Assembly (NCBI GenBank): GCA_038496445.1
Contig: JALMLS010000216.1
Coordinates: forward strand, 434,001 to 498,000
DNA: 64,000 nucleotides
From: Trichosphaerium sp. ATCC 40318
Taxonomy: Eukaryota > Protista > Tubulinea
Reading direction: 5' to 3'
Part shown: positions 8,165 through 13,566 of the stretch, piece by piece
Numbering within the stretch: position 1 is the first letter of the stretch
How the letters are laid out: every line of letters begins with the position of its first letter
Notes under the pieces: generated by a model
The model's database searches: none
Told to the model about the DNA's origin: nothing
Seen by the model: only the letters and a program-made list of their open reading frames with translations
Program-made: the position numbers and the translations under genes

Positions 8165-9546
8165 ATGGATCGCGCAGAAGGTAATAAAAAACCGTTTGAT
8201 TCGGCGTATGATACAGTAAATCAAAGGTAAACGTTTTTGTTAGCTTGTATCGTTCTAAAACAATGTGTAGCACTCAAAAAACATTACTGGACATGCCTAC
8301 TGAGATTATAGCGACTATTTTAAGTCATACAACCAAATCTCGATTTGCAGCTTGTCAGACATGTCGTATCCTTTCTTCTATCATTCACGACATTATCGGA
8401 TACCATAGTATACGTATAACAACTGAAAATCAAGTGAAACAAGTTGTACAGCATTGTGGAATTATGAAACACACAAGGATCGATTTAGTACTTAACATAG
8501 ATTTTGGGTTTCCTTCTGACAAGATTGTGGAACAATTTGCAGGAGTTCATACAATTGCCTTGAAGGGTTGTCGACTTACAGACAAAGTAATGACATATTT
8601 GGCCGGAGTTCATACAATTGACCTGTTTTGGGCATCAGTGACAGATGAAGGAGTGAAAGCACTCAAAGGTGTTCATACTATTAACCTTTCTTGCACATCA
8701 GTGACAGATGAAGGAGTCAAAGCACTCAAAGGCGTTCATACTATTGACCTTTCTACGACCTTAGTGACAGATGAAGGAGTCAAAGCAATCGGAGGTGTTC
8801 ATACTATTAACCTTTGCCACATATCAGTGACAGATGAAGGAGTGAAAGCACTCAAAGGTGTTCATACTATTGACCTTTGCCACGCATCAGTGACGGATGA
8901 AGGAGTCAAAGCACTCGCCGGTGTACATACTATTCAACTTTCTTGCACATCTGTAACAGATGAAGGAGTGACAGCACTTGCAGGAGTTCATACAATTGAC
9001 TTGAGCTATACTAAAGTGACTGATAAGGGAGTTAAAGCACTTATTGGCGTTCATACTATTAACCTTTGTCGGACTGCAGTGTCAGATGAAGCACTCCAAA
9101 GTCTTGTTGGTGTACACACAATTGACCTAAAGAGTTGCAGTATTACAGTTGAAGGAATCAAAGCACTCAAAGACGTTCATGAGATTAGTCTTTCTTTCCC
9201 AAAAGACTCATGGCTTAAACATCTTTGCAATGTACACACTATCAATATTTCTCACGGGAGATATATAACAGATGATGGAATTAAATCATTGACCAATGTC
9301 AAACGCCTTGAGCTTCACAATTTCTCTAATATAACAGACTTGGGTTTTAAGACATTGGTCAACCTTGAGCACCTCACCATGGGTTACTGTCCACAGATTA
9401 CAAATGGTTGCTTGAAGCACTTACCATCTTTAAAATATGTTAAAGGATTGAGAAATACCAAAGTTACACAAGAAGCTGTTGAGTCATTGGGTATTCAATA
9501 TATTACCTCTAGAATCCAGTTCAATATGTTAGAATTAGCTAATTAA
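8165..9546 (+). CDS. F-box + leucine-rich repeat protein (22-aa 'GVHTIDL..T.VTDEGVKAL' LRRs)
   Basis: F-box LLDMPTEIIATILSH..CR.L, followed by roughly 13-15 LRRs. A short first exon from ATG 8165 splices in frame through intron 8227-8270; the rest is one ~1.27 kb exon. Confidence 0.88.
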
Positions 9547-10185: not shown

Positions 10186-13100
10186 TCAGACAAGTACTAT
10201 CTCCCTGTATGACCAAGCGCTCTTATTCTTTTTGATCACATCACAACCACAACAATCTAAATTCCTCATGCAGACACAACTTCCGGTATTCTCTCCTCGG
10301 TAACCTTGCCTTCCTCTGTATGCGTTCATATATCTGTTATCACAATCAGGATCAGCTACAATAGCAGCTGCGCATTCATCATTAAACCACTGGTGATTAT
10401 AATCTCGTCCATTTACAAGGAGTTGCTTGAAGCAAAGCTGAGATTTTTGCTCTCTTGTACCGTTACAAGTGATAGATGATCCAGCACCTGACCAATCACC
10501 TTGTAATCCTTTACAAGCTCTGTACCCTGTTGCGTTGACAAATTTAATTTTCTTTGGTAACGGTGTTGTTGATGGCTCAAGATCGCAGTTGATGCATTTA
10601 TCTTGCAGCAGGAATCTAGGGAATGTTGATACAGTAATATCTCTATTTTTTTTGGCAGAGTAGCAATCTATACATTGATCTCCGTGTCGCCATGGAATAT
10701 CCTTTGTTGTCGGTTCAGGGTTGGAAGGGAATATATTGCCTTTGTTCTTCACATAACATGTTGCACCGTAAGCAGGGTCACCAGGAAGTACAGTCTCGTA
10801 TTGTCCTCTGGTATCGCTTCCACTTCTGGCGTATACGGCCATACACATGAATGCCTTGCTTGGATCTTCTTCTAGGTTGAGTTTCGTCATGTTTACAGTG
10901 TCTAAGCACTTTTGAGGTATGAGTTGAGCTTGAGAATACCACCTATTGCCTGGGACGGCTAGAGGAGCTATGTATACGCCTTGGCATATCTTCTTTCCTT
11001 CACAGAATTTGAGACAGTATTTTAAATTACTGAATACTCTTGTGCAACCTAGTACGTAAAGTCAACGAAGTGAACACTTTTGCTTTCAAAAAAAGAAAAT
11101 GAAAAAAAGAATGAAAAAGATATCTCTGTGGAACAAACACGTACCTCTTGTTGATTTAGGCGTAGGGAAGTAACAATGATCAACGCGCCTTCACACAAAA
11201 CAATAAGCAAAACAGAATTATACGTTCATGAATAACTATTGTTTTTTTTTTTCTCGCTAAAACTTACGTGTATCGTGCTCCAGGAGGAGGAGCTATACCA
11301 TAAATTTCGTCTACATGATGATCTACGTAATCTATATCTGTGCAATCACGGTATCCTTTCCATAACCAATGTACCTATATTGTATTGTAAACAATAAGAA
11401 TGTGACTAAAAAGGTAACGTGCACGTGATTTTTTTTCTAGAAACTAGACTTTTTTTTTTCAACGTACAATGTATCTTCCAAATCCAGCACGTCCAGGTAT
11501 TCTAAATTCGGCGACATCAGAGCTTGATGGTCTGTGAGAGGGGTGATTTGCTCTTAATACTGCTTCAATCCATGGATAGTCTGGGTGCTCATACTCGGCC
11601 CAATTATCTTTATGTAGCCCTTCTCTGTAGTTAACCAGCTTTTTAGTTGGCTTAGGTCCCCATCCAGTACTTCCTGAGAAAACACCTGGTCTCACAAGGT
11701 AGTCTGGAGAATCAGGTGGAATAATATCACCATATAAAGGACCAACACCGCTGTCAGATGTTCTGTAGTATATATTAACAGTAGAGATAGCTCCGGCAGG
11801 TGCATCCGCAAAGTACTTTTGGAAGAGTCTCTTGTTGTGGTACTTCAGCTTGTCTTCGTCTTTAGCATGTACGATAACAAAGTAACCAGGAGAAAAGTGA
11901 CCTGAAGCCCATTCGATTTGGAACTTTTGGTCAGGACCGATTTGAGTATGTGGGCCGTTTGTGACTTTTGGAGGACAAGGACCTTCTGTACTTGCGTGAC
12001 CAGCTCTCGCTGGGCTTCTGAGCCAGTTGTGCGCGCTTGCAGATGGTAATAGAAGTAAAGAGATGAGAGCGAGGCCAAGAATCATAGACGTTGTAGCGTG
12101 GCTCTTGCTGGTGAAGAAAGCTACGCCAAAACTGCACATAGCCAACAATAGGAACGAAGCAATAGGCCTTGATGATGAACTTCCCATGCTTCCGTCCCCT
12201 GTATTGTTTGGATCGTTTGGATCTGTTGGATCTGGTAGATCACCTGGAGCCAGTGTAACGGCAAGACATTTACAGAAGCGCAATCTATTTAAAAAAATGT
12301 TAGAAGTAAAAAAAACAGAAGCTGACCAACAGTGGCAATTCTTTCAATTTAGAGTACGTACCCGTCTTCTTCATTGGTGCTTTTAGCATCACATGTAGCA
12401 ACATCTGTTGAGCGACCATCTTCGCATGACATATCGTCGTAATAACACATGCCGTCTGTAGTTTGTGTTGTTCCCATAGCACTGCAACCGCTCAAAAATG
12501 GTTTTCTGCAAATAAAACCGGAAGGCTTCAAGAGTCTATTAATTTCCGAAACACTGTTTATGCCTTGAATAGATACAGTATCGCAAAGGAGGCTCTCTTT
12601 AGAGCATCTCTCTGTGCACGATTCTCCAAGCTAAGAAAAGAATAAGACGTCAAATCTTGAACTTGGTTTTTTTTTGGTTTTTTTTTTCGTTTAAAACGAT
12701 TAACTTACCTCTGTTTGGAACCATCCAGTGTTGGTTGGAAGAGAGTCTGAAGATTCTGTGAGTGAGAATTCATTACCTCCGTTTGGCCACCAGAAATCAC
12801 CAGTGTTGGCTGCGCCGCTCTTGATGAGAACATGAAAAGTGATTTTGCCTGTTCCAGCTGGAGGAGCGATGAAAGTTAATGTTGTCATGAGTGGTTTCGG
12901 TATAGCGTTCGCGTGCATAACACTACGTCCACAAGGATGCGAATCCTCCCAAGGTAGTGTGAATAAAGCTAAAAACCGAAAAAAGTAAGCAAAAAAAAAA
13001 TTGTTGTTTCGGCCAAAAAAAGATCCGAAATATTAAGCGCACGTGGTTCATCATTTGACAATTTCCATTCACCAACATGACTTCCAGTAGAATTTACAGC

Positions 13101-13566
13101 GTACCTATAACAAAAACATTAATTAGATGTCCGAGAGAGACTAATAGAGAAAAAAAAAGAAGAAAAAAACAAGATTATTGATTTTTATGTGTTTGCTTTT
13201 GTAAACGTACATTAGGATTCCCCTGTACTTTTTAGAATAGCTTGTTACAAGTATTGTAATATCTACAATGCTACCAGGTACGTATGTTGTTTGTGGAGAA
13301 TCCTCTTCACCAGCGAATACCTGATACTTTGAACTAGCCGTCACCTTAGAAGCCCAATGCATGTGTGGCTTTGGCGACTCGTTACAGACTAATCTGTTCT
13401 TGCCGCCGCTTTGCAGGGTAGCCCACTGTGCAGGGTCACATCCCCAGTTTGTAGAAGTTGCATCACAAGAGAATACATTCTCAGGGTTCGAGTTGGAAGC
13501 GCAAAAACTCTTTGCGATTACAAGTATTAGTAATAGCGAAATACCGCGGTACAGTACCGCGAGCAT
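10186..13566 (-). CDS. Secreted/membrane polyprotein: signal peptide, Reeler-like domain, Cys-rich domain, TM helix, internal signal peptide, His-brace LPMO-like domain, Cys-rich C-terminus
   Basis: Exons splice in frame through GT-AG introns. Reeler-like YVPGSIVDITI..KYRGILMYAVNS..VGEW..CGRSVMHANAIPK..TFIAPPAGTGKITFHVLI; internal ..LLLLPSASA|HNWLRSP..EWASGH..YIVHWLWKGYRDCTDID. Confidence 0.75.

What the first reader, a model, noticed from the sequence alone, without database searches (positions are those of the whole stretch)
10186..13566. Polyprotein with an internal signal peptide that would unmask an LPMO-type histidine brace
Seen: within one exon, a low-complexity linker (DPTDPNDPNNTG) is followed by hydrophobic helix 1 (IASFLLLAMCSFGVAFF), a short polar loop, and hydrophobic helix 2 ending in A-S-A. 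Directly after comes H-N-W-L-R-S-P-x-R (His codon 12029-12031), a second His in EWASGH (~11897), and C-terminal YIVHWLWKGYRDCTDI. Known: LPMOs and LPMO-like copper proteins need His as residue 1 after signal cleavage, a second His, and a terminal W.W..[FY]xxCxD strand. Inference: one ORF yields two products, a membrane- or GPI-anchored Reeler protein and a separately released copper oxidase-like protein. Such virus-style signal-peptidase polyprotein processing is rare for cellular genes. Possible role in attacking prey or pathogen cell walls.
Basis: partly seen in the sequence, partly recalled or inferred. Interest (0 to 1): 0.85.

Follow-up and report, generated by a model that had tools for sequence, protein, structure and literature searches.

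The report
Internal signal peptide unmasks LPMO-like histidine
One protist gene encodes a membrane-tethered Reeler protein and, after an internal signal peptide that probably gets cut, a secreted copper-enzyme-like domain starting with the histidine such enzymes need as first residue, a layout conserved across many protists and not reported for this enzyme class.

Summary
A minus-strand gene of 8 exons (13566-10186) gives a clean 925-aa ORF. A single exon carries the linker, hydrophobic segment 1, an 8-residue polar loop, hydrophobic segment 2 ending A-S-A, and then His401-Asn-Trp.

A search of 1.84 billion representatives found 295 relatives.
- In 131 of the best 150 (42 N-terminal and 89 internal forms that passed the hydrophobicity filter), H-[NQ]-[WFY] directly follows a signal-peptide-like stretch.
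- 42 forms have that stretch at the N-terminus.
- 89 have it internally. All 89 carry A/G/S at -1 and a small or V/T residue at -3.
- At least 69 representatives share the whole Reeler-hairpin-His layout, including complete Trinity transcripts from two amoebozoans.
- An initiator Met before segment 2 is not conserved.

Best reading: a cellular polyprotein of the IGSF1 type, cut by signal peptidase to expose His1 of a new LPMO-like family. Cleavage, copper binding and activity are inferred, not shown. The scan's first readers noted two more such loci elsewhere in this genome.

The parts
10186..13566 (-). Whole gene. The 8 exons are 13566-13211, 13104-13043, 12968-12709, 12630-12362, 12284-11468, 11374-11268, 11188-11145 and 11048-10186. 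The ORF is 925 aa.
   Evidence: Spliced model with GT..AG introns and no stop. It is collinear with uninterrupted homologous ORFs.
13498..13566 (-). N-terminal signal peptide, about residues 1-23 (MLAVLYRGISLLLILVIAKSFCA).
   Evidence: Hydropathy analysis. 22 complete relatives start with an equivalent signal peptide followed by an SSG..CD motif.
12742..13389 (-). Reeler domain, about residues 60-215, spread over exons 1-3.
   Evidence: The family profile A2 hits the F-spondin reeler domain 2zou at E 1.6e-5. Pfam Reeler matches 9 of 29 members, best E 1.5e-10. In the Atlas feature search, 73 of 100 hits are Reeler clusters (score 0.93).
12257..12711 (-). Cys-rich module resembling the C-terminal domain of GnT-V (MGAT5), residues about 226-325, ending in the conserved R-F-C-x-C motif.
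   Evidence: Profile A2 hits GnT-V chains (6yjq and others) at E about 1e-4. Pfam Glyco_transf_18 C-terminal region matches 8 of 29 members. The RFCxC motif is seen upstream of segment 1 in many relatives.
12167..12256 (-). Low-complexity linker rich in D, P, N, S and G (residues 326-355). Its small residues could serve as a GPI omega site.
   Evidence: Read directly from the sequence. In relatives, small residues make up 0.59 of the 14 aa before segment 1, against a background of 0.45.
12110..12166 (-). Hydrophobic segment 1 (residues 356-374): a stop-transfer half of a hairpin, or a GPI-signal-like tail.
   Evidence: Hydropathy analysis. The family median core length is 14.5 aa.
12086..12109 (-). 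Short polar loop SKSHATTS (residues 375-382), predicted to be cytosolic.
   Evidence: The family median loop length is 6.5 aa and it usually contains K or R.
12032..12085 (-). Hydrophobic segment 2, the internal signal peptide MILGLALISLLLLPSASA (residues 383-400). Cleavage is predicted after Ala400.
   Evidence: Across 89 internal relatives, -1 is A/G/S in 89 of 89, -3 is A/V/T/C/S/G in 89 of 89, and a Pro or Gly lies at -7..-4 in 68 of 89.
11149..12031 (-). HNW domain, LPMO-like (residues 401-637, exons 5-7). Key residues are His401 (12031-12029), Arg409, His445 (11899-11897), Tyr473, and the strand W-x-G-Y-x-D-C-x-D (within 11374-11327).
   Evidence: 295 homologues were found. H1, R9, H46 and Y76 are invariant in 94 sequences. 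The AF2 model of P0001:377-649 has pLDDT 91.3. The best structural matches are LaX325, AA15, AA13 and AA10. No Pfam family matches.
10894..11148 (-). Small Cys-rich module, possibly PAN/apple-like (residues about 638-690).
   Evidence: The conserved pattern is C..C....C.GV.VVP in relatives. Only 3 members give weak PAN_4 hits. This assignment is tentative.
10189..10866 (-). C-terminal Cys-rich domain of unknown fold (residues about 700-925). It has no hydrophobic tail.
   Evidence: It is conserved in relatives, with 8 invariant Cys in alignment A3. It has no Pfam or PDB sequence match. A 324-nt contig of the RNA-labelled run X1 covers 10243-10566.

Best explanation
The gene encodes a secretory-pathway polyprotein.

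The N-terminal signal peptide takes the Reeler plus GnT-V-C-terminal-like half into the ER lumen. Hydrophobic segment 1 stops transfer. The short basic loop stays cytosolic. Hydrophobic segment 2 re-initiates translocation as an internal signal peptide. Signal peptidase then cuts after A-S-A (Ala400).

This yields two products.
- (a) A Reeler protein held on the membrane by the hairpin, or possibly converted to a GPI anchor.
- (b) A soluble secreted protein whose first residue is His401.

The free amino group of His401, together with invariant His445 and a Tyr in the W-x-G-Y-x-D-C-x-D strand, would form a copper histidine brace in a beta-sandwich domain. That domain belongs to a new, sequence-distinct LPMO-like family. 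It is followed by Cys-rich, probably glycan-binding, modules.

Shown: the sequence anatomy, family-wide conservation of the cleavage-site rule and of His1 and His2, the single ORF or transcript in relatives, the Reeler identity, and the LPMO-like fold of a confident model.

Inferred: the cleavage itself, copper binding, and oxidative action on a polysaccharide. I put action on a polysaccharide at about 0.45 and a copper-handling role like X325/Bim1 at about 0.25.
For: - Anatomy in one exon, with exactly three hydrophobic segments.
- 295 homologues. His1 aligns either at residues about 15-30 or internally at 200-900, and always follows a signal-peptide-like stretch.
- The -1/-3 rule holds in all 89 internal forms. 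A Pro or Gly lies in the c-region in 76% of them.
- 77 of 91 internal forms have two hydrophobic segments. Median lengths are 14.5 aa, 6.5 aa and 15 aa for segment 1, loop and segment 2.
- The N-terminal half is homologous in at least 69 fused representatives.
- The fused ORF is found on transcripts from Flabellula baltica, Cavostelium apophysatum (ORF complete) and MMETSP assemblies. It is also an uninterrupted ORF with an upstream in-frame stop on a 2,994-nt contig.
- A standalone form has its own signal peptide, an upstream stop and a poly(A) tail.
- Fused and standalone states switch at least 11 times on the domain tree, while His stays at +1 of the predicted cleavage site.
- H1, R9, H46 and Y76 are invariant. 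The window keeps every conserved position.
- A review states that the His brace cannot bind Cu until the signal peptide is removed (PMC10952591).
- There is a cellular precedent with the same topology: IGSF1 (PMC5841168).
Against: - There is no experimental or read-level evidence for cleavage. The only RNA-labelled run covers just 324 nt of the last exon.
- The model is of a 46%-identical relative, not of the window protein. A single-sequence model of the window's exon 5 piece failed (pLDDT 36).
- No profile or sequence link to any CAZy AA family or Pfam LPMO model was found.
- Position 2 is Asn, not the Gly typical of AA10/AA15. That comparison rests on my own knowledge.
- Other conserved His residues (His428, His628) hint that the metal site may differ from a classical brace.
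Confidence: 0.7

Rival explanations
1. The protein is an uncleaved two-pass membrane protein. The two hydrophobic segments form a permanent hairpin, and both large domains are displayed together on the cell surface. His401 is then an ordinary internal residue and no histidine brace forms.
For: Two adjacent hydrophobic segments with a short basic loop are what a helical hairpin looks like. Some relatives have a segment 2 of 20-23 residues, which is long enough for a stable anchor. There is no direct evidence of cleavage.
Against: - All 89 internal forms obey the -3/-1 rule, and 76% have Pro or Gly at -7..-4. A permanent anchor has no reason to conserve this.
- The median core of segment 2 is 15 aa, which is signal-peptide-like.
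- In 42-47 relatives the same domain starts exactly at this His after a normal N-terminal signal peptide. The domain has moved between the two contexts repeatedly with His always kept at +1.
Confidence: 0.12
2. There are two independent products made without proteolysis. An internal promoter or start site would give a second mRNA, or translation would initiate at Met383, so that MILGL...ASA acts as an ordinary N-terminal signal peptide of a nested gene.
For: The window protein has a Met exactly at the start of segment 2. The only RNA evidence covers the 3' exon alone, so a shorter transcript cannot be excluded here. Standalone relatives exist.
Against: - 42 of 69 fused relatives have no Met anywhere in -32..-11. 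Many of the Mets that do occur lie in segment 1 or in mid-helix.
- The reading frame stays open across the junction in at least 69 representatives that are 30-46% identical.
- Full-length fused ORFs are found on assembled transcripts.
- The junction lies within one exon.
Confidence: 0.05
3. Processing occurs as proposed, but the His1 domain is a non-enzymatic copper-binding or copper-acquisition protein. It would resemble fungal X325/Bim1 rather than a polysaccharide-cleaving LPMO.
Against: - The product is a large multi-module secreted protein with appended Cys-rich modules. One relative carries a ConA-like lectin module (Laminin_G_3). This pattern is typical of carbohydrate-active enzymes rather than of small GPI-anchored X325 proteins.
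- The N-terminal H-x-W-[LIV]-x-x-P-x-R and C-terminal Y-x-D-C-x-D-[VI] motifs resemble AA10/AA15 signatures. This comparison rests on my own knowledge and was not tested here.
- AA15, AA13 and AA10 score close behind X325.
Confidence: 0.25

Closest known systems
LPMO-like copper protein X325 (LaX325, PDB 6ibh; Bim1 family)
   Different: There is no detectable sequence similarity. X325 proteins are small, single-domain and GPI-anchored, with an N-terminal signal peptide. Here the domain is about 235 aa and sits behind an internal signal peptide, with more modules after it. The GPI-like signal belongs to the upstream Reeler half.
AA10/AA15 lytic polysaccharide monooxygenases (e.g. TdAA15A 5msz, CelS2 4oy7, BtLPMO10A 5wsz)
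   Different: Pfam LPMO_10 does not hit any of the 94 family members. Residue 2 is Asn rather than Gly. The second His comes at position 45 rather than about 85-115. According to the review, all known LPMOs have N-terminal signal peptides (PMC10952591). Most of this family does not.
IGSF1 (and astrotactin-1/2): cellular proteins split co-translationally by signal peptidase at an internal signal peptide
   Same: [quoted passage not shown]
   Different: The domains are unrelated (Ig loops; MACPF/FNIII). In those proteins nothing is known to depend on the chemical identity of the new N-terminal residue. Here the cut would create the metal-binding residue itself. Cleavage is experimentally shown for IGSF1 but not here.
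Flavivirus, pestivirus, alphavirus and bunyavirus glycoprotein polyproteins
   Same: Short TM hairpins whose second helix serves as the signal sequence of the next protein, processed by host signal peptidase (papers listed).
   Different: Those are viral and yield several products. This is a cellular gene family with introns, conserved among free-living protists.
Reeler-domain proteins (F-spondin, ferric-chelate reductase 1 / SDR2 with DOMON and cytochrome b561, insect Reeler-only proteins)
   Same: The N-terminal half contains a genuine Reeler domain. Reeler domains recur next to redox modules such as DOMON and cytochrome b561.
   Different: No DOMON or b561 module is found here. The Reeler domain is followed by a GnT-V-C-terminal-like Cys module. 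It also carries family-specific, nearly invariant Met and His residues that are absent from F-spondin.

Membership tests
LPMO / histidine-brace copper proteins (functional class) | His is residue 1 of the mature protein, directly after a signal-peptidase site. | tested here: met
   His is invariant in 94 of 94 sequences. Across the 131 analysed homologues, -1 is A/G/S in 128 and -3 is small, V or T in all 131; both hold in all 89 internal forms. In the window the sequence is P-S-A-S-A|H. This is an in-silico result only; cleavage was not observed.
LPMO / histidine-brace copper proteins (functional class) | A second conserved His that completes the brace. | tested here: met
   H46 of the domain (His445 in the window, codon 11899-11897) is invariant in 94 of 94 sequences, within the E-W-x-x-G-H motif. 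Its spatial proximity to His1 could not be measured.
LPMO / histidine-brace copper proteins (functional class) | T-shaped His-brace geometry and an axial Tyr or Phe from a C-terminal strand. | not testable with these tools
   A candidate Tyr (Y196 of P0001's domain, conserved in 89%; the window has W-K-G-Y-R-D-C-T-D in exon 6) lies in predicted strand E196-204. Model coordinates are not exposed, so no distances were obtained.
LPMO / histidine-brace copper proteins (functional class) | Immunoglobulin/FnIII-like beta-sandwich fold shared by the AA9-AA17 families and X325. | tested here: inconclusive
LPMO / histidine-brace copper proteins (functional class) | Copper binding and oxidative cleavage of a polysaccharide. 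| not testable with these tools
   This needs ICP-MS or EPR and product analysis on recombinant protein.
Existing CAZy/Pfam LPMO families (LPMO_10 / AA10-AA15, Glyco_hydro_61 / AA9, and others) | A significant match to the family's sequence profile. | tested here: not met
   There is no Pfam hit on the window's pieces or on any of the 94 family members at E up to 1. The family profile finds no LPMO among PDB sequences at E up to 10. I therefore do not file it in any known AA family.
Signal-peptidase-processed cellular polyproteins (IGSF1 type) | N-terminal signal peptide, luminal domain, TM1, short cytosolic loop, and a second hydrophobic segment with a signal-peptidase site before a second luminal domain. 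| tested here: met
   The window has three hydrophobic segments and an A-S-A site. The layout is conserved in 77 of 91 internal relatives. 22 relatives have complete N-terminal signal peptides.
Signal-peptidase-processed cellular polyproteins (IGSF1 type) | Demonstrated co-translational cleavage into two polypeptides. | not testable with these tools
   No proteomic data are available. The RNA run covers only 10243-10566.
Reeler domain (PF02014) | A match to the Reeler profile or fold. | tested here: met
   The window's exon pieces alone give no hit. The family profile hits the F-spondin reeler domain at E 1.6e-5. 9 of 29 members pass Pfam Reeler, best E 1.5e-10. 73 of 100 nearest Atlas clusters are Reeler. 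The window's N-terminal half is homologous to these members at E 1e-81.
GPI-anchored protein (for the Reeler half) | An omega site made of small residues, a polar spacer and a hydrophobic tail of 12-20 aa. | tested here: inconclusive
   The core of segment 1 has a median of 14.5 aa and is preceded by a stretch rich in small residues (0.59 against 0.45). An internal GPI signal has been shown to work in a DAF-hGH fusion (PMC2288913). No GPI predictor was available, and the tail is not C-terminal.

The most novel reading that the evidence does not exclude
This locus would belong to a new LPMO-type copper histidine-brace family that is found in amoebozoans and other microbial eukaryotes and is invisible to current Pfam and CAZy profiles. 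In most of its members the catalytic N-terminal histidine is created by signal-peptidase cleavage at an internal signal peptide of a cellular polyprotein, not by removal of an N-terminal signal peptide. The co-translated Reeler half stays on the membrane in 1:1 stoichiometry as the enzyme's partner. It might act as a docking, substrate-binding or electron-delivering module. Its family-specific invariant Met and His could be metal or haem ligands.
Probability: 0.45. Interest if true: 0.88.

Novelty: new variant of a known kind. Interest (0 to 1): 0.8.

Why it matters
Histidine-brace copper proteins are thought to be activated only by removal of an N-terminal signal peptide. A 2023 review states that all known LPMOs and related classes carry N-terminal signal peptides, and that cleavage demasks the copper-binding amine (PMC10952591). 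For this reason LPMO domains are searched for only at protein N-termini.

This family would show a second route: an internal signal peptide inside a cellular polyprotein. Internal His-brace domains are then systematically missed by annotation.

It would also add a sequence-novel LPMO-like family from poorly studied predatory or free-living protists. It would give a rare non-viral example of signal-peptidase polyprotein processing under clear selective constraint. And it would offer a natural pairing (Reeler protein plus copper domain, made 1:1) that could point to the physiological partner or electron source of such enzymes.

Tried and rejected
- Pfam on each exon translation gave nothing significant. 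Reeler became visible only through family profiles.
- phmmer of the domain against PDB sequences, and the family profile against PDB, found no LPMO. The only hit was a chance riDHC motif match to chondroitinase B.
- The word-indexed homologue search with the 188-aa piece gave zero hits, because of its length window and word limits. Later searches with P0001 and with A1 returned only 5-6 proteins. The exhaustive HMMER search was what worked.
- The Atlas feature search on the domain found no meaningful neighbour (0.78).
As a result the Reeler half and the C-terminal Cys domain could not be modelled.
- Foldseek against PDB and AFDB clusters gave only weak E-values (1e-3 or worse) with LPMOs mixed among other sandwiches.
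- One small RNA-labelled run held only a 324-nt contig of the last exon. It says nothing about the junction.
- No paralogue was found elsewhere in the window by tblastn.
- The two-adjacent-genes or gene-model-artefact reading was rejected: single exon, no stop, fused transcripts in relatives, and a non-conserved Met.
- Literature searches for LPMO together with an internal signal peptide, a Reeler domain or amoebae found no prior description.
- Two look-ups of cluster names gave few taxa. Only Flabellula, Cavostelium and MMETSP assemblies are named.
Full report
**1. What is in the sequence**

The region 13566-10186 carries a minus-strand eukaryotic gene. Joining eight exons at GT..AG boundaries gives a 2,778-nt, stop-free ORF of 925 aa. 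The exons are 13566-13211, 13104-13043, 12968-12709, 12630-12362, 12284-11468, 11374-11268, 11188-11145 and 11048-10186.

The model is collinear with uninterrupted homologous ORFs from other organisms. For P0001 the N-terminal half aligns at E 1e-81 and the C-terminal half at E 1e-88, each as a single aligned stretch.

Hydropathy analysis finds exactly three hydrophobic segments:
- residues 1-23, an N-terminal signal peptide;
- residues 356-374 (PIASFLLLAMCSFGVAFFT);
- residues 383-400 (MILGLALISLLLLPSASA).

The last two are separated by the loop SKSHATTS.

His401 (codon 12031-12029) follows A-S-A directly. The second His of E-W-A-S-G-H is His445 (11899-11897).

One exon, inside one 274-aa ORF, holds all of the following: the end of the upstream Cys-rich module (LRFCKC), the D/P/N/S/G linker, both hydrophobic segments, His401, and 188 aa of the downstream domain. 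The junction therefore does not depend on my splicing model.

It lies in the next exon (11374-11327).

**2. Homologues**

Pfam, PDB-sequence and word-indexed searches with the window's pieces found nothing.

An exhaustive HMMER search of 1.84 billion cluster representatives, using the 188-aa piece that starts at His401, found 295 proteins at E up to 1e-3 and 117 at E up to 1e-10. The best hit is 46% identical.

Query residue 1 aligns in one of two places. In some proteins it falls at residues about 15-30. In others it falls internally, at 200-900, in proteins of 800-1,700 aa. In every case I inspected it is H-N-W-[LIVM]-x-x-P-S-R preceded by a signal-peptide-like stretch.

Counts over the best 150 hits, plus the window:
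- 42 N-terminal and 89 internal forms pass a hydrophobicity filter.
- In all 89 internal forms, -1 is A (71), G (10) or S (8), and -3 is A, V, T, C, S or G.
- 68 of 89 have Pro or Gly at -7..-4.
- The N-terminal forms show the same pattern.
- 77 of 91 internal forms have two hydrophobic segments within 70 aa upstream.
- Median core lengths are 14.5 aa for segment 1, 6.5 aa for the loop (usually with K or R) and 15 aa for segment 2.

**3. One gene, one ORF**

The N-terminal 330 aa of the window protein are homologous to the N-terminal parts of at least 69 of these representatives (E down to 1e-81). Twenty-two of them have complete N-termini with their own signal peptides. The whole architecture is therefore conserved at 30-46% identity.

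Named sources are Trinity transcripts of the amoebozoans Flabellula baltica (P0006) and Cavostelium apophysatum (P0103, 'ORF type:complete'), and MMETSP transcriptome assemblies (P0177, P0183).

P0001 is a 976-aa uninterrupted ORF that fills a 2,994-nt contig, with an in-frame stop before its ATG. P0046 is an uninterrupted 1,340-aa ORF on an NCBI genome contig.

A Met at the start of segment 2 is present in the window but is not conserved. 42 of 69 fused relatives have no Met between -32 and -11. Independent translation of the downstream half cannot be the family's mechanism.

Conversely, a standalone member (P0027) has an in-frame stop directly before its ATG, an ordinary signal peptide, His at residue 19 and a poly(A) tail on its contig. 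The domain demonstrably also works with His as the mature N-terminus.

On a maximum-likelihood tree of 94 domains, well-supported branches force at least 11 switches between fused and standalone states. Some of these may be fragmentary gene calls. What stays constant through the switches is His at +1 of a signal-peptidase site.

**4. What the downstream domain is**

Alignment A1 (94 domains) has invariant H1, R9, H46 and Y76. It has nearly invariant N2, W3, P19, Q31, Q36, D142, Y147, P153, D172, G185, W193, G195, D198, D201, G214 and H227. The window keeps all of these that fall in exon 5. Exon 6 supplies W-x-G-Y-x-D-C-x-D.

No member hits any Pfam family, LPMO models included.

AlphaFold2 with A1, run on the closest relative's complete domain (P0001:377-649), gives a confident beta-sandwich (pLDDT 91.3, pTM 0.86).

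- then many AA10 enzymes, plus AA9, AA11, AA16 and fusolin.

16 of the top 40 are LPMO or LPMO-like proteins. Most are aligned from model residue 1 to chain residue 1.

**5. The other parts**

The N-terminal half is a Reeler domain:
- The family profile hits the F-spondin reeler domain at E 1.6e-5.
- Pfam Reeler matches 9 of 29 members.
- 73 of 100 Atlas neighbours are Reeler clusters.

It is followed by a Cys-rich module homologous to the C-terminal domain of GnT-V (E about 1e-4), ending in R-F-C-x-C.

After the His1 domain come two more modules. One is a small Cys module, weakly PAN-like. The other is a conserved Cys-rich domain of about 225 aa with no Pfam or PDB sequence match.

The window protein has no C-terminal hydrophobic tail, so the downstream product should be soluble.

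**6. Mechanism**

The topology that fits all of this has four steps:
- The N-terminal signal peptide is removed and the Reeler half enters the lumen.
- Segment 1 stops transfer.
- The basic loop remains cytosolic.
- Segment 2 re-inserts as a signal peptide and is cut by signal peptidase at its luminal end.

[quoted passage not shown] The same is reported for astrotactins (bioRxiv 10.1101/493858). It is also the logic of flavivirus and bunyavirus glycoprotein precursors.

A review of histidine-brace proteins states that the brace cannot bind Cu until the signal peptide is cut, and that all known LPMOs and related classes have N-terminal signal peptides (PMC10952591). That explains why selection would keep a signal-peptidase site immediately before this His in every context. 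It also shows why an internal version is unexpected.

How the Reeler half stays attached is open. It may be held by the hairpin. Alternatively, segment 1 is short and preceded by small residues, so a GPI anchor is possible. An internally placed GPI signal has been shown to function (PMC2288913).

**7. Function**

I favour a secreted, modular copper oxidase acting on a polysaccharide, at about 0.45. The reasons are the AA10/AA15-like terminal motifs, the appended Cys-rich modules, and a ConA-like lectin module in one relative.

I put a copper-handling role like X325/Bim1 at about 0.25, because X325 is the top structural match.

Extra conserved His residues (His428; His628 in the D-H-C motif) leave room for a different metal site.

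**8. Novelty and context**

No paper in the searchable library links LPMOs with internal signal peptides, Reeler domains or amoebae.

The processing principle has cellular precedents, and the fold class is known. I therefore rate this a new variant of a known kind: a sequence-novel LPMO-like family with a new way of generating His1.

The scan's index holds two further first-reader notes on other pieces of this genome that describe the same architecture (s1-387260, s1-390497). These are unverified, but they are consistent with a small paralogous family.

RNA evidence at this locus is limited to a 324-nt contig over 10243-10566.

Noticed in passing
window 8245-9546 (+): A 433-aa ORF with an F-box-like N-terminus (LLDMPTEIIATILSH). 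It is followed by about 13 tandem 24-residue LRR-like repeats of the form GVHTIDLsxTxVTDEGVKALxx.
   Followed up: no
window 13389-12742 (-); alignment A2: The Reeler half has family-specific, nearly invariant Met and His residues (M51 and H141 of P0001:10-315; in the window, P-H-M-H-W and V-M-H-A-N-A). F-spondin's reeler domain lacks the His at the aligned position. They might be metal or haem ligands. Reeler domains elsewhere sit next to DOMON and cytochrome b561 redox modules.
   Followed up: partly
P0003 versus P0012 (homologues, not in the window): A standalone form (His24, 269 aa) and a fused form (His438, 952 aa) have almost identical HNW domains but different upstream signal sequences. 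Overall, well-supported branches of the domain tree force at least 11 fused/standalone switches. Some 'standalone' forms may be fragmentary gene calls.
   Followed up: partly
window 11181-11173 (-), R-V-D-H-C-Y-F: A strongly conserved [RK]-x-D-H-C-[QYF]-[YF] motif marks the end of the HNW domain (His 93%, Cys 87%). Its only PDB sequence echo is a repeated riDHC.f motif in chondroitinase B, which is probably chance.
   Followed up: no
window 10243-10566: The single RNA-labelled public run that holds this locus has one 324-nt contig over the last exon, with one G>C difference at 10532. The run is tiny (13 million letters) and its RNA status is only guessed.
   Followed up: yes
P0027 residues 529-673 (locus L004): One standalone family member carries a C-terminal ConA-like lectin/glucanase module (Laminin_G_3, E 1e-10) in place of the window's Cys-rich domain. 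This suggests the C-terminal modules are interchangeable glycan-binding parts.
   Followed up: no
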